From contig NW_021832565.1 of NCBI RefSeq assembly GCF_006345805.1, positions 1-64,000 on the forward strand: DNA of 64,000 bases, in the 5' to 3' direction. This document shows positions 5,130-59,345 of the stretch, piece by piece. Position 1 is the first letter of the stretch. Every line of letters starts with the position of its first letter. A model generated the notes under the pieces. That model was not told the origin of the DNA and did no database searches. It saw nothing but the letters and a program-made list of their open reading frames with translations. The stretch is from Octopus sinensis. Taxonomy: Eukaryota. The position numbers were made by a program, and so were the translations under genes.

Positions 5130-5184
5130 TGTGTGTATGTATGTATGTATGTATGTATATATACACATACATGTATATACATAC

Positions 5185-5215
<31 letters not shown>

Positions 5216-5264
5216 ATATACATACATGCTTGTGCACGTTCGCGCACGCATACACGCATGCATG

Positions 5265-9777: not shown

Positions 9778-10404
9778 ACTCTTTTACTCTTTTACTTGTT
9801 TCAGCCATCCGGCTGAGGCCATGCTGGGGCACCGCCCTTGTTGCTACCCTCTCTAAGTCCAGTTTGCCGTGGCTGGCCACTGATCTAAGAGAGAGTTTGT
9901 AGCTGCTGCCCTTAGGTTACCTTCGTACCTTGCAGTGGGTTCATCTGGGATCCCGGAAAGCAGCTTGTCTAGATGTTTTTTGAAAATGTCCACATCCGCA
10001 TCATGTAGATCTCTTAGTTTTCTTGGCAGTTTGTTGAACAGCTGAGGGCCCCTGAACCCCAGGCTATTACAGTATCTGCTCCTTACCCTGGATGTGGAAG
10101 ACGGGACCTTTGGCACCACACTGTGACGTCCTGTACGGGGATTGGAACAGCTCTCAATTCCAAAATTTGGTGCTAGTCCCTCCAGGATTTTCCATATGTA
10201 TATCACTGCATATCTCTCTCGTCTTCGTTCCAAGGAGTACAAATTGAGTTCCCTAAGCCTCTCCCAATAGTTCTTTTCTTTCATGGTGGAAATCCTCTTG
10301 GTGAAATGTCTTTGGATTGTCTCAAGCTCTGTGGTTAGTTTGACACTATGCGGTGACCACAGTTGGGAGCAGTAGTCCAGGCGGCTTAGGACAAATGTCC
10401 TCCA
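9778..10404 (-). mobile_element. 5'-truncated CR1-type LINE 3' end, reading frame open
   Basis: Uninterrupted frame from ~10404 to stop at 9853: [78 protein letters not shown]. Short 3' UTR ending in (GTAAAAGA)n. Flanked by TA tracts. Confidence 0.93.
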
Positions 10405-19374: not shown

Positions 19375-19409
<35 letters not shown>

Positions 19410-19658
19410 TGTATGTATGTATGTATGTATGTATGTGCGTATGTATGTATGTGCATATGTATGTATGCGTGTACATGTATGTGCGCATGCATGTGTGCAT
19501 GCCTATACGCATGTATGTACCTATGTACTTACGTATGTATGTGAGTATTTAGGAGAGTGTGTAGACGTGTCTGTGTGTTTGTACATGTGTATGTATATGT
19601 GAAAGTATGTTTGTGTAATGATATGTGTCAGTTCAACTTGAACTGACAGAATTATATA

Positions 19659-24194: not shown

Positions 24195-24485
24195 CTTTAC
24201 TCTTTACTCTTTTACTTGTTTCAGTCATTTGACTGCGGCCATGCTGGAGCACCGCCTTTAGTCGAGCAAATCGACCCCGGGATTTATTCTTTTGTAAGCC
24301 CAGTACTTATATATATATATACGACAGGCTTCTTTCAGTTTCCGTCTACCAAATCCACTCACAAGGCATTGGTCGGCCGGGGCTATAGCAGAAGACACTT
24401 GCCCAAGATGCTACGCAGTGGGACTGAACCCGGAACCATGTGGTTGGTTAGCAAGCTACTTACCACACAGCCACTCCTGCGCCTA
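24195..24485 (-). mobile_element. tRNA-derived SINE family A, internally deleted
   Basis: Head caggagtggctgtgtggtaagtagcttgc and tail ggcggtgctccagcatggccgcagtcaaatgactgaaacaagtaaaagag on the minus strand. Confidence 0.9.
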
Positions 24486-26191: not shown

Positions 26192-26588
26192 TAGGCGCAG
26201 GCGTGGCTTTGTGGTAAGAAGTTTACTACCCAACCACATGGTTCTAGGTTCAGTCCTACTGCGTGGCACCTTAGACAAATGTCTTCTATTATAGCCTCGG
26301 ATCGATCAAAGTCTTGTGAGTGGATTTGGTTGACGGAAACTGAAAAAGCTCTGTCGTATAAATATGTATACGTGTCTGTTTTCCCCTGTTTTCCCACCCA
26401 CAGCTTGACAACTGATGTTGGTGTGTTTACGTCCCCGTAATCTAGTGGTTCGGCAAAAGATACCGACAGAATAAATATCAGAGTTTTAAAAAAAAGTACT
26501 GGGGGTCGATAATTTCTACTAAAAACTCTTCAGGATGGTGCCCCAGTATGGCTGCAGTCTAATGACTGAAGCAAGTAGAAAGTAAAAA
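26192..26588 (+). mobile_element. SINE family A
   Basis: ggcgcaggcgtggctttgtggtaag head through aatgactgaagcaagtagaaag tail. Confidence 0.88.
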
Positions 26589-27575: not shown

Positions 27576-28499
27576 ATTACCAACATATTATTTCAACGTT
27601 CCAATATATATGACTGAAACAAGTGAAAAAAATAGTTAAATGGGAGAACTAAATAGTTGGTTTTTACCGTTCTACCTTCGAAACAGGCAGATCGATAAAA
27701 TATAGTACCAGCTAATTACTGGGGTAGATTAAATCGAATATGTTCATAATTCACGATGCATGGCTTTGTGCCATTATTGTAGATCAGGAGATACTTTTTA
27801 AGTAAATATATTCTTTTATTGAAAGATAATGCAATGTAAAATTACTTAATAGAGAGTATATACTTCCTTTTCAGAAGAACCTAGCAATTATTGAATATTT
27901 GTAGATTTTTTTTTCTTAACATTTTTGTGTTTTTGATACTGAAAATACAGTTAACGAAAACTTTGGTCTGATCAAAGGTGATAGAGTGTCTCTATTATTA
28001 AATGATAAGTGAAAACAATTTACAGAAAACAGACGTTTTTAGAACAAGCAGCAAAATAAATGAATAAATTTGAGGTAATAAATAATATAGGAAATAAGTT
28101 TATCCGGAAGATGTACTTCTCTATTTTTATGGGTCTATACTCTCGGCGTGTATATGAATGTGTATATGAGTATGCATATACATTTCATAACAAGACACAT
28201 ACAGGGCACATAACAATTAGTGTTAGCAAGGAATTTCTCAAAGGTTGTTCATATAACATTTGAGTTATTTGAGGCTTCCTGCAATAAATCTTTGTAATGA
28301 AAGAATAAACAGAAATGGTCGACTTAAGATATACGATTTGAAAATGTGATCATATTTCATAGCAATCACTTTCAGCCCTGGCGTTTCTTTTACTGGGCTG
28401 ACATATGGCCTGAGAACTTCTGAGGCACTGGAGACTTGTTTGCTGGGCAGACGCATGATCTGACATCCTTCTGTCACGATTTGCTCGATGGGTGGAATC

Positions 28500-30003
28500 G
28501 AGCAGAACCCGGTGTTGGTAGATGGATGTGCCTCGAAGATAACGCTATTCGGCTCACTTCTAGGAGAAGAACGACCCGCTCACATCAGACCCGTGTTTAT
28601 AGTTCGTGGTATCGTCCACTTAAATACCGACAGCCTCTCGTGGGAGACCTTCTGCCAACGGACAGCAAAGCTTACTCCAATCAATTAACCGGGCGTCGTG
28701 GAGGAAAACCTTCCTCTCGTCTTCGATAGGTAGACATTGAGAGTATCTCTTCGACGTGTGCGTGGGGCAGCCTCGAGGGTTATGCTCTGCCTGAACAAGC
28801 CATTTCATTCTGTAGACGCTTTTTTACTTCTTAGCATGTGGTACCATCCACCTTAAAACAACGGTACCGGCTTGGAGAATAAAGATTTGGGTCAGTATCT
28901 CGTCCTATGCTCGTGTTGCTATCAGTGAGTGCACTGTGGAACTATCCACGTAAACTTCAGAGTAAGTTGCGGTTTCGCATTCATAAAAGTAGCCAAATTC
29001 ATCGACATCTAATTAGTGATATGCATAAACAGATCAACGGGATTTTCACTGTCTCTCTCTGCTGTGTAACAAAATCACAGTTAAGGGAACAGGCTTAGAC
29101 GGATCGTAGGGGAAAGAGAACTCTGCTGAGCTTGACTCTAGTTTTGTTTTATGAGGGTGCTTAGTTGGCGTAGCATAAGCGGTAGCATTTGCATTGACCA
29201 ACGCCGACCGCCGATACTAGCAGCGTCGCGACCGCTGTCCTCTTACGATTTCTCTTGTACCGACGTTGTCGGTTGGTCGGTTTCGTGTCGGGGTGTCGTT
29301 CGCGTTTGCGATGATGAAAAACCGGACCGTGGGGGAAAGAGAACTCTGCTGAGCTTGACTCTAGTTTGGTTTTATGAGGGTGCTTAGTTGGCGTAGCATA
29401 AGCGGTAGCATTTGCATTGACCAACGCCGACCGCCGATACTAGCAGCGTCGCGACCGCTGTCCTCTTACGATTTCTCTTGTGCCGACGTTGTCGGTTGGT
29501 CGGTTTCGTGTCGGGGTGTCGTTCGCGTTTGCGATGATGAAAAACCGTCACTTCCATAGTTACTTCACGCACTAGATGGTAAAGGGATCGAGCAGTCAAT
29601 GAGAAGTGATTCATTATCTGGTGCGAATTGCGTGGTGTATGTCAAGCGCCCCGACGGGTGCCGATGCGACCGATGCACAGCACTTCATCGAGAAAATTGA
29701 CGGTCGAAGAGTCTGACTGAGGCGGTATGTGTGTCAAATAACGCAGGTGTCCCAAGGCGAGCTCAGCGTGGACGAAAACCTCACGTTGAGCAAATGGACA
29801 AAAGCTTGCTTGATCTCGATTTTCCGAAAGAATATGGACACACTCAAAGATCATCACTGTTTGAAGGAAATTGGTTTTCATGATGTCTATGTCTTATCTT
29901 GTCTTGTCGCCTTTAAAGTGTTCACAGAGCATTGATCTGAAGTTATGATGTCGGCATTTCGAAACTCAATGTGAGCCATCGTGATACAGATATCTCTTTT
30001 CCA
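28500..30003 (+). pseudogene. Highly divergent eukaryotic 28S (LSU) rRNA-like sequence, mainly domains IV-V, with deletions
   Basis: Colinear matches to the eukaryotic 28S core as I recall it: gtagccaaa..catctaattagtga (28989), aagggaac..ggggaaaga..gagcttgactctagt, taacgcaggtgtcc..aggcgagctcag..gcttgatct (29738-29822), gatgtcggc (29947), tcgtga.acag. Homology is firm from ~28985 and tentative upstream. Confidence 0.88.
29109..29547 (+). repeat. 223-bp-period tandem duplication inside the 28S-like locus
   Basis: Units 29109-29324 and 29332-29547 differ at about 2 positions. Confidence 0.97.
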
Positions 30004-30470: not shown

Positions 30471-30872
30471 CAGGAGTGGCAGTGTGGTAAGTAGCTTGCT
30501 AACCAACCACATGGTTCCGGGTTCAGTCCCACTGCGTGGCATCTTGGGCAAGTGTCTTCTGCTATAGCCCCGGGCCGACCAATGCCTTGTGAGTGGATTT
30601 GGTAGACGGAAACTGAAAGAAGCCTGTCGTATATATGTATATATATATATATATATAAGTGTGTGTGTCTGTCTTTGTCCCCCTAGCATTGCTTGACAAC
30701 CGATGCTGGTGTGTTTACGTCCCCGTCACTTAGCGGTTCGGCAAAAGAGACCGATAGAATAAGTACTGGGCTTACAAAGAATAAGTCCCGGGGTCGATTT
30801 GTTCGACTAAAGGCGGTGCTCCAGCATGGCCGCAGTCAAATGACTGAAACAAGTAAAAGAGTAAAAGAGAAA
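30471..30872 (+). mobile_element. Full-length SINE family A, well preserved
   Basis: Complete head, body, internal TA/TG tract and (GTAAAAGA)n tail. Confidence 0.95.
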
Positions 30873-31189
30873 AGAGTAATATACTTTATATACTTTAGGC
30901 ACAGTTTTATAGACTTAATACACAGCGCCCATAAAATAAATATTCACTCTTATTTTTCCATTTTTCCCATAGACAAAAAAAAAATATCCTGTACATATGA
31001 TACAGCCTTTAGTTAAATTGCACATAATACAACCTTTAGTTAGGAATGTGCATGTATTAGGTGATATGTGATGTAAAAAGTTTACTTCAGTTTAAAAAAA
31101 TACACTTTTCAATATCTAATCACCACTACCACCACCACCACCTCAATCTCCACCACAGCCACCATCATCATTTCTCTCTCCCTCTGTCC

Positions 31190-31241
<52 letters not shown>

Positions 31242-31548
31242 TCTCTTTCTTTTCCTTCTCTCTCTACCTTTATTTAAACTCACCATCAGAATATCGCCTC
31301 TCTGCTAAAATTATATTTTTAACTCTCTCCCTCTTACTTCATCTAGCTTTTTTAACCATGTAATAAATATGACGTTCTCTCACCTCACGTCATGGACGCT
31401 TCTGTCTCTCCCTTTTCTTTCTCCCTCTTTCTGTCTCGCTCTTTGCCTTATACTCTTTTCTTCTCTCCTTTACCTTTCTCCTCACTTTCTCTTCAACTAA
31501 TCAAGTGAAGGCATTACAATTACATTCCCTCTACCTCACGTCATGGAC

Positions 31549-35312: not shown

Positions 35313-35853
35313 ATGAATATCATTAGGAAATATATATAAAAATATTGTTTAAATATTTCATGCATTGTAGAAGTATAACTCATTTATTGCTGATAAATTT
35401 TAACAAAAAAATTTTATTTGGAACCCCAAGGGCCATATGAACCCCACATGAGAACCACTAGTCTGACCCATACTAACCTGGATAAACAAGTGCAAAGACA
35501 AATGAAAAACGGATGAAGTGTATGATTTTTCTCTTATCCCCTTAACAATGCAAGTAGAATTAAGCATTAGTCTAGAAGACCTGAGAGGAATGTGTAAAGG
35601 TAAACTTTTGTAGGAAACATGTAACATCACATTGATGTGATTATTTCGAAAGTTGAAATGATATCTCTTCTAATGATTGTGGTAAGTATTGATAAAGTTT
35701 TTCATCAATTCCCTGAAGTTGAGTAGCATCATGCTTCGTTGATACTGTGATTGGTGATGCTTCAGAAAAATTACCTTAAGAAAGACAGGTTTTGCCAAGT
35801 TTTAGATCTAAAATCATCTCATGAAACATGCCACAGCAACAAAAGATATATAC

Positions 35854-35885
<32 letters not shown>

Positions 35886-36789
35886 ATACATACATACACA
35901 CATATATGTACACATACACACTGACATATACATGCACACACACAAATATACACACACACAGTGTGTAGTAAGAGAATGAGAGGGAGAGAAGAAAAAAAGA
36001 GGTTTTGGGGAAATATCAATCATTCTAGGCTGATTTTAAGTTTGCAGCTGAGCAATTTGAAGTTTCCTCAATAATCAATCATTTCATAGAACATTAAACA
36101 TCTTACATTGCCCCTGATGTAAAATACTCTTTGCCATATAGTTTATCTGCTTTGAAGTTAGGAATTTTAACTTCAACATTTAACTGAAGGCTATAAAATG
36201 CTTTCAATATTTTCTGGCTAGAATTTTAGCAGAATTTTCAAGATTTAGGCAATAGTATTTAATAGTAGGAGAAGGATTAAAGACACTATGATTAGGGGCA
36301 AAATATATATTTTGATTGAAGTTGAGGCCTGAAGATTATCAGCTAAACTTAAATTTCTAAATATTGTTTTACAGTTTTACATCTAACATACATTCTTTCA
36401 AAACTTTTATTTCCTGCCTGACATCATTATAAATTATTAACAAAATAAATAAACATGATCAATCCAACAAAATATTCAGATTATCATATGATATGTGTAA
36501 AGTTTTTGATGTGATAATGATGAGAACTGCTAATTCATAAAAGGCTCTTTTACCATTTAAATATTCTTGGATGTTTGCTTTTATCAACAACATATAGTTT
36601 GGTTTTACTCAGAACTTTCAGGTTTTGCAATCCTGACTCTTTTAACACTTCTCTTTAAAAATCTCCGAGCATTGGTTCCCAAGGAGTAAAAATTATTTCT
36701 CTTGGGATATTCAGACAACTAATTTAAGCAAATGAGTATTATGCACATATTGTGCAATAAAATTTGCTTAAGTGGTGCCTCCACAACAT

Positions 36790-36975: not shown

Positions 36976-38099
36976 GTGCTGGATTGCTTCGAAATCCAGT
37001 TTGTTTCACACTTTCTGGGGCCTATAGTTGGGAGCAGTAGTCCAAGTGGCTGAGAATGAAAGTCCTCCATAAGAGTAGCAGGGCCTCTCTTGTCCTGGTT
37101 CTAAATGTCCTCAGAATCCAGTCAGTCACTCACCTGCACAGTGCTGTCATCTTGGTAATATGCACATGGAGTGTTGCATTATAGCTCATGAGAACCCACT
37201 CTGGGATCATATTACCTGACTCTGACTCTGGGATCGTATTACCTTCCGATCCAGTGTATTCCGATTTTAGCTATGGTGCTGAACCAATAGTGAAGTACCT
37301 GAAATTTCATTGCATTGAACTGCATGTTATTTTGTTAGCCCATTTGTTGATTTCGTTCAGGTCTTTCTGCAGTTTTAGGATGTCCTCTGGATTCCTAACT
37401 GCCTGTGATACTTTTGTGTCGTCAGCATTACTGGTCAGATTGGTTGACTGTACCATGGAGAGCATGTCTGAGAGAGTCACCACAAATAATTGTGGCCCCA
37501 GTACAGTTCTCTGTGGGACTCCACTGAGAATTGGTGTCTCTTTAGAGTGAGTACTATTGGCTACAACTGTCTGACTCCTGCCTTTCAGAAAGTCATGCAG
37601 CCACCCTCCCAGTTTCCCAGTAATACCAAGGGTTTGCATCTTGTGACATATCATGCCATGATCAACCTTGTTGAAGGCCTTGGCAAAGTCAAGGTATATC
37701 ACATCTACAGCTGACTGGTTTAGCTGTTGTTTCAGTACCCAGTCAAGGTGCTGCAGCAGCTGTGTGAGGCAGCTCCTCCCTGGATGGAAGCCATGTTGTG
37801 TGTTTGTGAGTAGGTTGTTTCCTCCTAGGAACATGATCAGCTTTATTCTAACAATGCATTCCATTGTCTTGCTAACATGTGAAGTCGGAGAGATGGGCCT
37901 GTTTTTAGCATCTGCTCTGCTCCTTCCTTTACGGACAGGGCAAACTATAGCCTCTTTTAGCATGCTGGGAAGTTTACCACATGCAAGGAAAGTCTGAAAG
38001 AGTATCTGCAGTGGCTTTGCAAGAGCCTTTTTATATATCTTTAAGAGAACAGCTGGGAGTCCCTCTGGGCCCATTGCTGAGTTTGATCACATCTCATCA

Positions 38100-40814: not shown

Positions 40815-41292
40815 GGCTGCAGGTGTGGCTGTGCAGTAAGAAGTTTTCTTCCCAGCATCATGGTTCTGAGTTCAGCCCTATTGTGTGACACCTCGGGTAA
40901 GGGTCTTATATTATAGCCTCAACTGACAAAAGGCTTGTGAGTAGATATGGTAGACAAAAACTGAAAGAAGCCCTTCGTATACATATATGTATGTATGTAT
41001 ATATGTATGTATGCATGTATGTATGTATACATTCATGTATATATGTATGTGCATGTATGTGCATGTATGCACATGCGTGTGTGTGTCTTTGTGTATGTTT
41101 GTCTCCCACCACTGCTTGACAACCGGTGTTGGATTGTTTACATTCCAATAACTAAGCAGTTCAGCACAAGAGTCTGATAGAATAAGTACCAGGCTTAAAA
41201 AAATAAGTACTGGGGTCAATTCATTCATCTAAAATTCTTCAAAGCAGTGCCCCAGCATGGCCACAGTCTAATGACTAAAACAAGTAAAAGCT
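40815..41292 (+). mobile_element. SINE family A
   Basis: Diverged full-length copy with an expanded internal microsatellite. Confidence 0.85.
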
Positions 41293-43654: not shown

Positions 43655-44005
43655 GGAGTGGTTGTGTGGTATGTAGCTTGCTTACGAACTATATGGTTCC
43701 GGGTTCAGTCCCACTGTGTGGTACCTTGGGCAAGTCTCTTCTACTATAGCCTCGGGCTGACCAAAGCTTTGTGAGTGGATTAGGTAAACGGAAACTGAAA
43801 GAAGCCTGTCGTGTATATGTATGTGTGTGTATATGCTTGTGTATCTGTTTGTCTCCCCAACATCGATTGCCAACCGATGCTGGTGTGTTTACGTCCCAAT
43901 AGAATAAGTTCTAGGCTTACAAAGAATAAGTCCTGGGATTGATTTGCTTGACTAAAGGCAGTGCTCCAGCATGGCCACAGTGAAATGACTGAAACAAGTA
44001 AAGAG
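43655..44005 (+). mobile_element. SINE family A within a decayed MITE-like repeat (~43565-44215)
   Basis: Head and tail match family A; flanks share ggaccc/tgtagatcc motifs with 58820-59500. Confidence 0.82.
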
Positions 44006-45910
44006 TTTGGTAACTTGTGTAAGTTGTACTATGCAAAACATTTGAGAAAGAAACCTTTTTCCTACAATAAATGCATTTAAAGTAATATTTTTTTTCATGG
44101 ACCATTATAATACTGCTGTAGATCCCTAATTTACTATTTCATTTGTGTGGACCCCATAAAGTTTTACACGGATGCTCATGGGTCATATGGACTCCAGTCG
44201 AGAACTACTGGTCTAGTTGAACACACACGCAACTATAACTACCACTTATAATATATAATTGTATTTTCTCCAAGATTGTTATTTTCTAAATTTTTTTCCA
44301 ATAATGCCATAGGAGAAGAACATACTAAAATACCATGTAAGTCATTTTCTCTAATTAGTACTGAATAAAAAGCTCTGAATCTGTTTTCTGAAAACATTTT
44401 GCAGACTTAGAAAATTACTTTATTTATCCATTCATTGCTATGATTTACTGTTTGGTTAAGCATCATCTGGTATAGAATAACATAGTTGTTGTTTTCTCAT
44501 AGTAAATAAATATTCAATGCTGATGGAAACGGGTTAGTATATTGGGTGTTGAAAAAGCAAAACAAAGCAAAAAAAAAAAAAAAAATTACGAGCAGCAAAA
44601 GAATACTAGCAAGATACCCTGAGGGAAGAGAGGAATTAGATTATACTTCCCTTGGCTGTATTTTTTCGAAATCCATCTTCATATTATTGCCATATTCTAC
44701 AGGAATCAGTTTGTTTTATTGATAATTTCTAGATTAATTCTCTCTCTCTCTGCTATCTATCTCAACCTACTCATTGACTTTTACTGATGAATATCAGTTT
44801 TTATTCTCACTAGCAAAGCTCAGTCACATAAACTCCAACTCTATTATTATTCCCTCTCTACTGATAGATTGATAACATTCATTATACACAGAGAAAGATT
44901 TCTTCCTATTTAAAAAAATAAAAACTAATAAAATAATGAATAATGCGAGTGCTGATTGCTGTATATCTTATTAAGATTTATGTTGAGTGCTGGAGTTGAT
45001 ATTAGCGTTGTTTTACTTGTTTTTATTTTTTATCAGTTTTTTTTTTGTTTTTTTTTTTGCAGATGGTGGTGGCAGCATTTTTTGATATAGTGATGGTGGT
45101 ATCAGTGATGGCATTGGTGTTGGTGGGAGGTGTGGTGTTAGTGATAGTGGCTACCATTAAAATCTGTATTCATCTTAGGACACAGAAGTTTCAACCTATT
45201 TAGCCTGTGGAAGATCAATGGTCCATAACATGAAGTCAGACTCCACAAAAACAGATCACAGTGATTAGAGGAATGGCCAAAACAGTAATGAATTCCACCA
45301 GTGAATCACAGTCTGGACTCAATGGAGATTAGGTTCTGAAACACAGTGAATGATTACGGCCAGATGGACTAGGGTGAAGTGCCAGAATACTTTAAGAGGA
45401 ATATGAAAGAAAAGACAGATGGATATGGAGATAGATACATAGCTAGAGTCAGTGAGAGAGAGAGAGAGAGGGGGAGAGAGAGGGAGGGAGAGAGGTAGAG
45501 AGAGAGAGGGGGAGAGAGAGAGGGAGGGAGAGAGGGAGAGAGTGAGGAGAGAGAGAGATTCAGAATGAGAAGATAAAGATCTATTCTCTTTTTACTAACT
45601 TCTACAGATATTCTTCTAATACTACCAGCATGATTAGTTGACAGGCAGGCTGATAAGTTGCCACCAGAATTAGATAGCTACCATTGGATATTACTCATAT
45701 TATAGTAAAGCAAAGCAAAAAAAAAAAAAAAAAAAAGAAATAGGAAAGAAAAGAAGACAGAGTCTAAAACGATAAATATATTTGCAACGTTGTTGTATAT
45801 ATCACAACTTGTATGACCTGATAAACATTCGAAAAAGAACTGTAGAAAAATATGCATAATATGCATACATGTGCATATGTGAGTGTATGCATCCATATAT
45901 ATACCTATAT

Positions 45911-45957
<47 letters not shown>

Positions 45958-46267
45958 GCATACATATATGTATTTATATATGCATGTATGTATGTATGTA
46001 TGTATGTATGTATGTATGTATGTGTGTGTATATGTATGTATGTATCTATGTGTTAATAAATGCATATGCACCAATATGATACTAATATGCTAATATGTAA
46101 ATATGTCTCTGCATGTATGCAAGTAACAGCTTAGCCAAACATAGCAAGATAAATGTGCATATGTGCATACACACACACGTGCACATACATTTGTATGCAG
46201 ATGTGTGTATGTGAATGTGTGCACGTATGTATATGCGTGTGTATGTGAATATATATATATATTTTTT

Positions 46268-46324
<57 letters not shown>

Positions 46325-46737
46325 TTGTGCATACACACACATGCACACACTCACACACTGATATTTATATACACATACTTATAATTATATATCCATATGC
46401 ATACATCATCAGCAATGGTATTTTAACATTCTATTTTCCATACTGGTATAGATGAGATGGGACTTTTTGAAGCATTGTTTTATTGCCATATGTATTTCCT
46501 GATGCCCAACTTTTTACATGCTGCTTATGAATTGCTAGTTTACAGTGTACTGTAGTTATTCTGAAAATTCAAGTCACATACATTTACATATTTAGAGATA
46601 TAATACTCAGAGAGAGAACTTTTAAAACAGTGGTTCCTAACCAATTCACTACCAAGGGCCCCTTTTATTTAAATGAGTTTTCACACAGACCCCAGGATAT
46701 TCTTATCCTTATGTGTATGTGTATATGTAATTATATA

Positions 46738-53418: not shown

Positions 53419-53750
53419 CATACTTACTTGGAAGTGAATGCATGGCATTCGATCATCTAATAACTAAATAATATATAAACATATGCATATACACCTACAT
53501 ATAGTACATACCTACATCTATATATGCATATATGGGTACAGTACACCAAAAAAAAGTTGAATACAATGAGAGACGAAAACATACGATGGGCTTCTTTCAG
53601 TTTCCATCTACTAAATCCACTCACAAGGCTTTGGTCAGCCTGAGGCTATAGTAGAAGACACTTGCCCAAAGTGCCACACAGTGGGACTGAATCCGGAACC
53701 ATGTGGTTGGTAAGCAAGCTACTTTCCACATAGCCACTCCTGCGCCTATA
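53190..53750 (-). mobile_element. SINE family A pieces (53190-53345, 53585-53750) separated by microsatellite
   Basis: Tail-side and head-side fragments; a further head fragment lies at ~53000-53065. Confidence 0.8.
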
Positions 53751-56950: not shown

Positions 56951-57575
56951 TTATATTCTGTTAAGAACGTAGTAGAGTAGAGTATAAAGCTCAACCACCT
57001 TTAGATTTCACCCGGTGCTATCCAGCAGTAGTATTATAGGTATTGCGTAGATATATAGATAGATACATAGATAGATAGACAAACAAGCAGAGAGACAGAC
57101 AGGCAGACAGACATAGAGATAGAGAGGCCCAGCAATCCTTTAACACAAAGAACATTTCTGCTTTTAAATTCAAACAATATATTTCTTTCCGAGTCAACCC
57201 GTTACTAGATATATTTTAAACTGAACAGCACATGAAGTGTTCCGTTATTTCATTTGTAGACTTATCTGTGTGTATAAAGATGCATGCACACACACACACA
57301 AATACACACATGCATCTCTATCAAATGTTTGAATTAAACATGCTCAGAAAAACTTCAATCTCATTGTCAACAAAATTATTCAAATACTGGAACTCTGCAG
57401 TCACACCGAGTCCCTTATCCAGTTAATGTTTGCTGTTTTAATGCATATATATCACATCCCTCTATCTATCTATGTATCTATCTATCTTATCTATCAATCT
57501 ATCGATCTATTATATATATGTATGTTTATATATGTATATGCATATATATGTACATGTATACAATTATGTATATAT

Positions 57576-57710
57576 CATCATCATCATCATCATCATTTAG
57601 CGTCCGTTTTCCATGCTAGCATGGGTTGGACGGTTCAACTGGGGTCTGGGGAGCCCGAAGGCTGCACCAGGCCAGTCAGATCTGGCAGTGTTTCTACAGC
57701 TGGATGCCCT
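57576..57710 (-). mobile_element. SINE family B, 3' part
   Basis: (CAT)n ttagcgtccgttttccatgctagcatggg..ttctacagctggatgccctt. Confidence 0.8.
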
Positions 57711-57932
57711 TATATACATAAATGTATACATGTACATATATATGCATATACATATGCATGTGTATGTTTACACACACACACATATATCTATACATGTGTT
57801 TATATGAATGTACATATGTATAGATAAATGAATGCATATATATGTATACCTACTGTAAGTATATATGCATATACATATGTGTGTGTGTATGTATGTATGT
57901 ATATATATATTTGTATATATATATATATATGC

Positions 57933-57999
<67 letters not shown>

Positions 58000-58944
58000 T
58001 ATAACACATACGCATGCTCACACACACACATACACACACTCACACACACACATATATATATTCAATACAGTAGCTATCCCCTTGAGATTGAAAGCCAATA
58101 GAAATGCACACGAAGAAATAAGTTGACATATTAGTGGGTAGAATAATTAATGCTTTATTACAGTTTTGAAAAGATGTTAATAAAATGGTTAGAATTCTCA
58201 TAACCATTCAATATCCTTTGCAACATGTCAGCAAATTGCCTGAAGTTTATCTTTCTTTAATTACTCTCTGTCTCCCTTTCTGTCTTTCTCTCTCTCTCTC
58301 TCTCTGTCATACAAATATTTGTAAAGGAAACACATGTAATTACTACTCAGACAACTGTGGGAATCTTGAAACACTTGAAACACAGCAACGAAAGAATTGT
58401 TAAAGTTATTAACAGTAAAGTATAACTATAGGCAGCGAGTGCACACATAAATATTGGCCTGATCACTGAAAGAAGAAAGAAAAAAAAAAGAACCTTGAAA
58501 TGTCTTAAGAATTTTGGCACAATAGTCAAGGAAGTACCACCAAAGAATTGTGGCATTTAATTTGGCAAAGAAAATTTTACCAACAGATATTAAAAATAAA
58601 TGATTCTCCAACCACTGTATTTCCCAGTGTTGAGGTCACTCTGACTTAACGATGTAAATTAGTTTTGGTTTGAAAATTACGAAACTAAAATAAACATCAA
58701 AATTAAGATTAGAGCACTTTCATATACTTTGCAAAAACATTTTGTTAGTGGTTTAGTAACATACATCAGTGATTTTCAGCCATTTTTTTACCTATGAACA
58801 CCTTTGTTTATTATTTTATTTTAGCAGACCCCACCTCACCAACCATAGCCATTCACTGTTTGAAAACTAATTTTATACATACTCCTTTCAAAATTCCTGA
58901 TTTGTCATTCGCTCATTCACTCATTCACTCATTCACTTGCATTG

Positions 58945-59345
58945 GCACAGGAGTGGCTGTGTGGTAAGTAGTTTGCTTACCAGCCACATTGTTCTGGGTT
59001 CAGTCCCACTGCGTGAAACCTTGGGGAAATGTTTTTTACTATAGCCTCGGCCCAACAAAAGCCTTGTGACTGGATTTGGTAGATGGAAACTGAAAGAAGC
59101 CTGTTGTGTATATGTAGATATGTGTGTGTTTGTGTCTGTGTTTGTCCCCCAACATCGCTTGACAACCGATGCTGGTGTGTTTACATCCCCATAACTTAGC
59201 AGTTCAGCAAATGAGACCAATAGAATAAGTACTAGGCTTACAAAAGAATAGGTCCTGGGGTCTATTTGCTCGACTAAAGGTGGTGCTCCAGTATGGCCAC
59301 AGTCAAATGACTGAAACAAGTAAAAGAATAAAAGAATAAAAGAAT
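58945..59345 (+). mobile_element. Full-length SINE family A
   Basis: Complete head to (AAAAGAAT)n tail. Confidence 0.92.

What the first reader, a model, noticed from the sequence alone, without database searches (positions are those of the whole stretch)
28500..30003. Very divergent 28S rRNA-like locus with altered catalytic-centre bases but a structured, CpG-rich expansion segment
Seen: colinear eukaryotic LSU core motifs, roughly one base in five different from the generic 28S core over 28985-29140 by eye. Changes are mostly C>T/G>A, many at CpG (gacgcgcat>gatatgcat, gctcgctt>gcttgctt, aacgtgag>aatgtgag). The P-loop reads gactgAggcggt (A at 29720), the PTC segment reads gagaactc instead of gaagaccc (29116-29123), the A2451 region is unrecognisable and the A-loop region looks deleted. 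Known: G2251/G2252 (E. coli numbering) pair with the P-site tRNA CCA end and are essentially invariant, so this cannot be a normal ribosomal RNA. Inference: either an old rDNA pseudogene, or an rRNA-derived repeat family or second rDNA class. The oddity is that the core looks CpG-decayed while the expansion segment stays CpG-rich and pairable, which uniform neutral decay does not predict.
Basis: partly seen in the sequence, partly recalled or inferred. Interest (0 to 1): 0.75.

Follow-up and report, generated by a model that had tools for sequence, protein, structure and literature searches.

The report
Decayed 28S rRNA gene fragment (pseudogene)

Summary
A eukaryotic LSU (28S) rRNA-like sequence really is there. 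Rfam LSU_rRNA_eukarya scores 98 bits at 29122-29928. A profile of 47 real LSUs gives E~1e-37 for 28986-29192 and 29526-29839.

It is not a working rRNA:
- Only about a quarter of the gene is present.
- 50 of 254 near-invariant columns are changed.
- 30 of 114 consensus base pairs are broken, against 1 in a real LSU control.
- P-loop and peptidyl-transferase-centre residues are mutated.
- No other rDNA part lies in the 64 kb.

Because of it the expansion segment appears twice.

The claimed oddity is largely, not fully, explained. Substitutions are biased from G/C to A/T in general, not at CpG (6/20 vs 30/112 changed, p=0.79). The rRNA core is CpG-poor even in real genes (o/e 0.72 vs 0.61 here). 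The expansion segment is CpG-rich (o/e 1.84), which still needs a very CpG-dense ancestor, but it folds no better than shuffled sequence (z ~0).

The extent 28500-28985 could not be shown to be rRNA-derived. Homology stops abruptly at 28986, next to the R2 retrotransposon target site, which is an untested lead.

Verdict: an old rDNA-derived pseudogene fragment, of low interest.

The parts
28986..29099 (+). LSU rRNA-like core, from the 3' part of domain IV (AAGG/TAGCCAAAT block) to just before the GGGGAAAGAAGACCC block. About 24% of near-invariant columns are changed.
   Evidence: nhmmer hit 28986-29192, E 5.7e-37. cmscan pieces 28989-29020 and 29070-29098. Substitution list.
29100..29322 (+). 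Tandem unit 1. It holds the mutated PTC-segment core (GGGGAAAGAGAACTCTGCTGAGCTTGACTCTAG) and expansion-segment copy 1 (29186-29314).
   Evidence: the repeat finder D2. TRF period 223, 2.0 copies, 98% matches. 4 differences and a CG microhomology at the junctions.
29323..29545 (+). Tandem unit 2, a near-identical second copy of the same core piece plus expansion-segment copy 2 (29409-29537). cmscan treats most of it as a 341-nt insertion.
   Evidence: nhmmer gives a second hit at 29332-29415, E 2e-12.
29186..29314 (+). Expansion segment at the tip of the helix between GTAGCATAAGYGGNAGC and TGAAAWACC. This is the ES30L/H78 position; that name is from memory. It is 129 nt, 57% GC, with 19 CpG (o/e 1.84), and is built largely of GTCG/CGAC motifs.
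   Evidence: the real references have 12-61 nt at this site. Folding is no better than shuffles.
29546..29700 (+). Second variable region (H79/ES31L position, name from memory), with insertions relative to the model. CpG o/e is 1.27.
   Evidence: cmscan alignment, composition, folding z = -0.64.
29701..29839 (+). LSU core holding the P-loop (GACTGAGGCGG, A at 29720) and the following helices. About 15% of near-invariant columns are changed.
   Evidence: nhmmer hit 29526-29839, E 1.5e-38..
29840..29976 (+). Much more degraded colinear remnant of the central loop of domain V (…CTTGTCGCC…AAAGTGTTCACAG…GATGTCGGC…), with internal deletions.
   Evidence: cmscan extends to 29928 at low posterior probability. 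Banded colinear alignment: 4 of 200 shuffles reach the score. Unbanded tests are not significant.
28375..28985 (.). GC-rich block (about 50% GC, CpG o/e about 0.95) of undetermined origin, directly upstream of the rRNA-like part. It may be over-decayed 28S or host-specific expansion segment, or the remnant of an element inserted at the R2 site.
   Evidence: Composition. No rRNA signal. No Pfam or PDB protein similarity. Not repeated in the window.

Best explanation
The locus is a non-functional relic. A fragment of a 28S rRNA gene became separated from the homogenised rDNA array and has since drifted neutrally in an AT-rich, transposon-rich region of an octopod genome.

Shown: the fragment runs from the end of domain IV through the middle of domain V.

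Inferred:
- Once outside the array it no longer underwent concerted evolution or selection.
- It accumulated about 0.23 substitutions per site at positions that working rRNAs never change, with a bias from G/C to A/T.
- It lost internal pieces by deletion.
- Late in its history, at roughly 4% of its age, it acquired a 223-nt tandem duplication by slippage or unequal exchange at a 2-nt microhomology.

It does nothing as an rRNA. The CpG-rich expansion segment is read as what remains of an originally very GC- and CpG-rich, motif-repetitive segment, in a locus where CpG is not specially mutable.

Not determined: how the fragment moved (DNA-level displacement or retroposition).
For: - Significant but low-scoring LSU homology: 98 bits over 807 nt, against 562 bits over 511 nt for a real LSU.
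- 30 of 114 consensus pairs are non-canonical, against 1 broken pair in the control.
- 50 of 254 near-invariant columns are changed. C/G changed 36/132 and A/T 14/122 (p=0.0016), a drift toward the window's 35% GC.
- No CpG-specific excess (p=0.79).
- Divergence in the two core blocks does not differ significantly (24% vs 15%, p=0.08).
- Invariant P-loop and PTC-segment residues are mutated.
- The 223-nt tandem duplication has only 4 differences.
- No SSU, 5.8S or other LSU part lies anywhere in the 64 kb.
- Host-type repeats lie on both sides: a SINE-like element in 6 copies, and a jockey-like RT fragment whose best named hits are Octopus and Argonauta.
- Displaced, degrading rDNA fragments are documented in the human genome (PMC5381670).
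Against: - The host's own 28S was not available, so derivation from host rDNA and the relative decay of expansion segment and core are inferred, not measured.
- The segment's CpG o/e of 1.84 implies an ancestral segment of about 74% GC with about 33-36 CpG in 129 nt under the core's rates. That is high, though partly explained by its GTCG/CGAC motif repetition.
- Homology ends abruptly at 28986 rather than fading, which uniform decay of a longer fragment does not predict.
- Copy number in the genome is unknown.
Confidence: 0.85

Rival explanations
1. The fragment is the 3' junction of an rDNA unit that carried an R2-type (28S-specific, non-LTR) retrotransposon. On this reading the unidentified GC-rich block 28375-28985 is a dead, 5'-truncated element, and the 28S sequence begins at its target site. 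This is a sub-variant of the pseudogene explanation rather than an exclusive rival.
For: The universally conserved 140 nt that should precede that point are undetectable. R2 occurs in Mollusca, and dead R2 copies flanked by fragmented 28S are described in birds (PMC5035012, PMC13188248).
Against: The upstream block shows no reverse-transcriptase or endonuclease similarity in any frame (Pfam; PDB, which includes R2 structures). No HDV-like ribozyme or any Rfam hit was found. The bases just upstream (ATAAAAG) could equally be decayed CTTAAGG of 28S. The coincidence was noticed after the fact.
Confidence: 0.1
2. The locus is one member of a dispersed rRNA-derived repeat family, for example a 28S fragment captured and spread by a transposable element, as in SINE28-type elements.
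For: TEs that carry rDNA fragments are known (PMC10946416). The genome-wide copy number could not be counted here.
Against: - There is a single locus in 64 kb.
- No poly(A), target-site duplication or TE coding signal is evident at the borders.
- An expansion-segment 25-mer is absent from the metagenome collection.
- ORFs across the segment have no relatives among 5.8 billion or 1.84 billion proteins.
Confidence: 0.06
3. It is a divergent but functional rRNA, either a second rDNA class of the host or the rRNA of a fast-evolving parasite, or else an assembly chimera with parasite DNA.
For: It passes the Rfam gathering score. The expansion segments sit at the right positions.
Against: - 26% of pairs are broken without compensation.
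- Near-invariant catalytic-centre residues are changed.
- About three quarters of the gene is missing, and no SSU or 5.8S is present.
- The internal duplication disrupts the fold.
- Host repeats lie within 0.5 kb and 2.7 kb.
Confidence: 0.02

Closest known systems
Displaced, degrading rDNA fragments ('orphon' or rDNA pseudogenes), as catalogued in the human genome (Robicheau et al. 2017, PMC5381670)
   Same: rRNA-gene sequence outside an rDNA array, escaped from concerted evolution, highly degraded, patchy in what remains detectable, and embedded in unrelated repeat-rich DNA.
   Different: This one is in an octopod and is only about 1 kb of 28S rather than a near-full unit. It also carries a young internal tandem duplication. 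Origin from the host's array is inferred, not shown.
Dead R2 insertions flanked by fragmented 28S (Kojima et al. 2016, PMC5035012)
   Same: The 28S-like sequence begins at or next to the R2 target site and is preceded by unrelated sequence.
   Different: No R2 coding, 3' UTR or ribozyme similarity could be shown in the upstream block.
TE-borne 28S fragments such as mammalian SINE28 (cited in PMC10946416)
   Same: A piece of 28S found at a non-rDNA site.
   Different: No sign of multiple copies, of a SINE/LINE tail or of target-site duplications. The fragment is much longer than the fragments I recall such elements carrying.
Functional divergent rDNA classes (for example chaetognath or Plasmodium paralogous rRNA genes; from memory)
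   Same: LSU-like sequence differing from the canonical type.
   Different: Those keep full length, base pairing and catalytic residues. This locus keeps none of them.

Membership tests
Functional eukaryotic LSU rRNA gene (including a second rDNA class) | Scores above the curated Rfam threshold for LSU_rRNA_eukarya | tested here: met
   98.3 bits against a gathering score of 50. A real LSU gives 562 bits for a shorter stretch.
Functional eukaryotic LSU rRNA gene (including a second rDNA class) | Full-length, colinear gene with 5.8S/SSU in the same unit | tested here: not met
   Only model positions about 2279-2900 of 3401 are detectable. No other rDNA part lies in the 64 kb.
Functional eukaryotic LSU rRNA gene (including a second rDNA class) | Secondary structure kept (substitutions compensatory) | tested here: not met
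   30 of 114 consensus pairs are non-canonical, against 1 in control locus L001.
Functional eukaryotic LSU rRNA gene (including a second rDNA class) | Universally conserved P-loop and peptidyl-transferase-centre residues intact | tested here: not met
   G>A at 29720 in GACTGGGGCGG. Changes at 29118, 29119 and 29122 in GAAGACCC. All are columns >=95% conserved in the references.
rDNA-derived pseudogene fragment | Significant homology to rRNA together with loss-of-function lesions | tested here: met
rDNA-derived pseudogene fragment | Lies outside an rDNA array, in unrelated DNA | tested here: met
   AT-rich flanks with SINE-like repeats and an RT fragment, and no tandem rDNA units in 64 kb.
rDNA-derived pseudogene fragment | Neutral substitution pattern | tested here: met
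   G/C-to-A/T drift toward the local base composition (p=0.0016), no structural compensation, no CpG-specific effect.
rDNA-derived pseudogene fragment | Derived from the host's own rDNA (expansion segments match the host's) | not testable with these tools
   No cephalopod 28S could be obtained. The references were anonymous metagenome LSUs.
R2-bearing 28S remnant | 28S sequence starts at the R2 target site | tested here: inconclusive
   The alignment starts at 28986, with the envelope from 28966. The few bases upstream could be read either way.
R2-bearing 28S remnant | R2 sequence (RT/endonuclease ORF, 3' UTR, 5' ribozyme) directly upstream | tested here: not met
   No Pfam, PDB or Rfam similarity in 28330-28985. 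A decayed 3' UTR alone would escape these tests.
rRNA-derived dispersed repeat family | Multiple dispersed copies | tested here: inconclusive
   One locus in the window. Nothing related in metagenome or protein collections. The host genome was not searchable.

The most novel reading that the evidence does not exclude
The locus is the eroded 3' junction of a 28S unit that carried an R2-type site-specific retrotransposon, or one copy of a family spread with such an element. On that reading the 610-nt GC-rich block at 28375-28985 is the dead element. As far as my limited literature check went, this would be a trace of R2 activity not yet described in cephalopods.
Probability: 0.1. Interest if true: 0.3.

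Novelty: already known. Interest (0 to 1): 0.1.

Why it matters
It matters little. Stray, decaying rDNA fragments are a known by-product of rDNA array turnover.

The practical value is in annotation:
- The locus should be masked as an LSU-rRNA pseudogene.
- It should not be used as a 28S marker or mistaken for a paralogous rDNA class in cephalopod phylogenetics.
- Its tandem duplication is worth checking against long reads.

If the R2 lead held up, it would add a data point on 28S-specific retrotransposons in cephalopods.

Tried and rejected
- Exact look-ups of three window ORFs in the assembly index found nothing.
- Spurious ORFs were tried as handles to reach related rDNA. The antisense core ORF hit only generic ART2-like rDNA ORFs at 46-79% identity, with insects on top and nothing close. 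The two ORFs across the expansion segment had no relatives at all.
- A 25-mer from the expansion segment gave 0 hits in the metagenome collection.
- The R2 idea was tested by six-frame inspection, by Pfam, and by a PDB search of the three forward frames. No support.
- Selection on the expansion segment's structure is rejected, because folding energies equal those of shuffles.
- CpG-methylation decay of the core is rejected as a specific effect. With only 20 CpG-site bases, a mild effect cannot be excluded.
- Placing the source lineage failed. All 120 reference LSUs are about equally distant.

Full report
**What is there.** The Rfam covariance model for eukaryotic LSU rRNA matches the + strand at 29122-29928. 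The score is 98.3 bits (gathering score 50), covering model positions 2412-2824 of 3401. Weaker colinear pieces lie at 28989-29020 and 29070-29098.

To get real yardsticks I fetched 120 eukaryotic LSU loci from metagenome contigs, using a motif shared with the window. I built a profile from the 47 full-length ones. nhmmer with that profile hits 28986-29192 (E 5.7e-37), 29332-29415 (E 2e-12) and 29526-29839 (E 1.5e-38), and nothing else in the 64 kb. A window-wide permissive Rfam scan shows no SSU, 5.8S or further LSU part. Its other weak hits are microsatellites matching miRNA models below threshold. The rRNA-like nature of the locus is therefore real.

**Extent.** On the right, a much more degraded colinear continuation reaches about 29976. 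It contains recognisable CTTGTCGCC…AAAGTGTTCACAG…GATGTCGGC. In a banded alignment anchored on the last robust column, 4 of 200 shuffles reach the observed score. Unbanded tests are not significant.

The following all give nothing above shuffles:
- BLAST-short;
- local and semi-global alignment to the LSU consensus;
- banded alignment (52 of 200 shuffles reach the score);
- a cmscan of 28330-28984 on its own (no hit at E<=10).

The block 28375-28985 is nevertheless compositionally distinct from the AT-rich flank, with GC about 0.5 and CpG o/e about 0.95. It is not repeated in the window.

Positions 29100-29322 and 29323-29545 are a perfect-register tandem duplication of 223 nt with 4 differences. 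A CG microhomology sits at the junctions. Each unit holds the mutated GGGGAAAGAGAACTC…GACTCTAG core and one copy of the expansion segment. The CpG-rich segment is therefore counted twice in any reading by eye, and cmscan shows unit 2 as a 341-nt insertion.

**How diverged, and in what way.** I compared the window with columns that are >=90% conserved among the real LSUs. Of 254 such columns, 50 (19.7%) are changed. That is 33/139 in 28986-29160 and 17/115 in 29690-29839, which do not differ significantly (p=0.08). The Jukes-Cantor distance is about 0.23 (my arithmetic).

Of the 50 changes, 27 are C>T or G>A. However:
- CpG-site bases changed 6/20 and other C/G 30/112 (p=0.79);
- C/G as a class changed 36/132 against 14/122 for A/T (p=0.0016).

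The bias is thus a general drift toward A/T in a window that is 35% GC. It is not CpG-specific decay. With only 20 CpG-site bases, a mild CpG effect cannot be excluded.

The specific claims hold against columns >=95% conserved:
- GACTGGGGCGG reads GACTGAGGCGG, with A at 29720. By my recollection of E. coli numbering this is G2251.
- GAAGACCC reads GAGAACTC, with changes at 29118, 29119 and 29122.

**Function.** In the cmscan alignment, 30 of 114 consensus base pairs are non-canonical and one is gapped. The same region of a real LSU (L001) has one broken pair and scores 562 bits over 511 nt. The substitutions therefore ignore the structure. Together with the missing three quarters of the gene, the internal deletions and the duplication, this rules out a working rRNA of any class.

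**The claimed oddity.** Three points reduce it.
1. The rRNA core is intrinsically CpG-poor. Real LSUs have a median of 7 CpG (o/e 0.72) in the segment where the window has 4 (o/e 0.61). The core is not notably 'CpG-decayed'.
2. There is no CpG-specific mutability at this locus, so CpG-rich sequence is not expected to lose CpG faster than other G/C.
3. The expansion segment is not 'structured' beyond its composition. MFE z-scores against dinucleotide-preserving shuffles are +0.48, 0.00 and +0.39 for the two copies, and -0.64 for the second variable region.

What remains is that the segment (29186-29314, 129 nt, 57% GC, 19 CpG, o/e 1.84) is the most CpG-dense stretch of the window. It is also far longer than the 12-61 nt found at this site in the mostly microbial references. 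Back-calculating with the core's rates (my inference) gives an ancestor of about 74% GC with roughly 33-36 CpG. That is high. It is helped by the segment's make-up from GTCG/CGAC motifs, which hold 8 of the 19 CpGs; such motif repetition is the cryptic simplicity that I recall being described for slippage-grown expansion segments. Whether it has really decayed less than the core cannot be settled without the host's 28S.

**Context and host.** A SINE-like repeat occurs six times in the window, on both sides of the locus; the nearest copies are at 30508 and 26235. A jockey-like reverse-transcriptase fragment at 37307-38074 has Octopus bimaculoides (78%), Argonauta hians and Octopus sinensis as its best named relatives. 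The fragment is therefore embedded in octopod repeat-rich DNA as assembled.

**Origin.** The best-supported reading is a displaced rDNA fragment that escaped concerted evolution and is eroding. This is a documented kind of relic (PMC5381670; review PMC10946416). The duplication is young relative to it: 4/223 differences is about 0.9% per copy, or about 4% of the fragment's divergence.

One detail is unexplained by simple erosion. Homology stops abruptly at 28986, although the 140 nt that precede this point in every LSU are among the most conserved of the molecule. As I recall the junction (AAGG|TAGCC), that point is the R2 retrotransposon target. R2 occurs in molluscs, and dead R2 copies flanked by fragmented 28S are known in birds (PMC5035012, PMC13188248). 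I found no R2-like coding, ribozyme or other signal in the upstream block. This remains a lead with perhaps 10% probability.

**Copies elsewhere.** I found none. Exact ORF look-ups failed. An expansion-segment 25-mer is absent from the metagenome collection. ORFs across the segment have no relatives. The antisense core ORF finds only generic ART2-like rDNA ORFs at 46-79% identity. These collections do not stand in for the host genome, so copy number is untested.

**Verdict.** This is a real but ordinary feature: an old, fragmentary 28S pseudogene with a recent internal tandem duplication. The repeat-family option is untested genome-wide and unsupported by the searches that were possible, and the 'oddity' is largely explained, with the segment's CpG density as the residual. 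Interest is low.

Noticed in passing
window 28966-28990: Detectable 28S homology begins abruptly at AAAGTAGCCAAAT, within a few bases of the R2 retrotransposon target site (site recalled from memory). The highly conserved 28S sequence that should precede it is undetectable.
   Followed up: partly
window 28375-28985: A 610-nt GC-rich block (about 50% GC in a 35% GC window) with no match to rRNA, Rfam families, Pfam or PDB proteins, and not repeated in the window. Its origin is unknown.
   Followed up: partly
window 29100-29545: A 223-nt tandem duplication, 2.0 copies, 98% identical, with a CG microhomology at the junctions. At all four differing sites unit 1 has A/T where unit 2 has G/C.
   Followed up: yes
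window 24414-24442(-), 26235-26263(+), 30508-30536(+), 43690-43718(+), 53677-53705(-), 58985-59013(+): A tRNA-like SINE-type repeat (core CACATGGTTCCGGGTTCAGTCCCACTGCG) is present six times. ARAGORN calls none of them a tRNA.
   Followed up: partly
window 37307-38074 (-): A 255-aa ORF with a reverse-transcriptase domain (RVT_1, E 4e-19). It is a jockey-like non-LTR fragment whose best named relatives are from Octopus bimaculoides, Argonauta hians and Octopus sinensis, which identifies the host as an octopod.
   Followed up: partly
window 9853-10284 (-): A 143-aa ORF that looked to me like the C-terminal tail of a non-LTR retrotransposon protein. It has no Pfam hit.
   Followed up: no
window, e.g. 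5130-5250, 19400-19530, 35843-35951, 40948-41140, 45850-46360, 57500-58060: (TA)n/(TG)n-type microsatellites give dozens of sub-threshold hits to mir-297, mir-3149, mir-466 and similar models. These are low-complexity artefacts, not miRNA genes.
   Followed up: no
window 31100-31470: A long CT-rich/(CT)n low-complexity tract with strong negative GC skew, just downstream of the locus.
   Followed up: no
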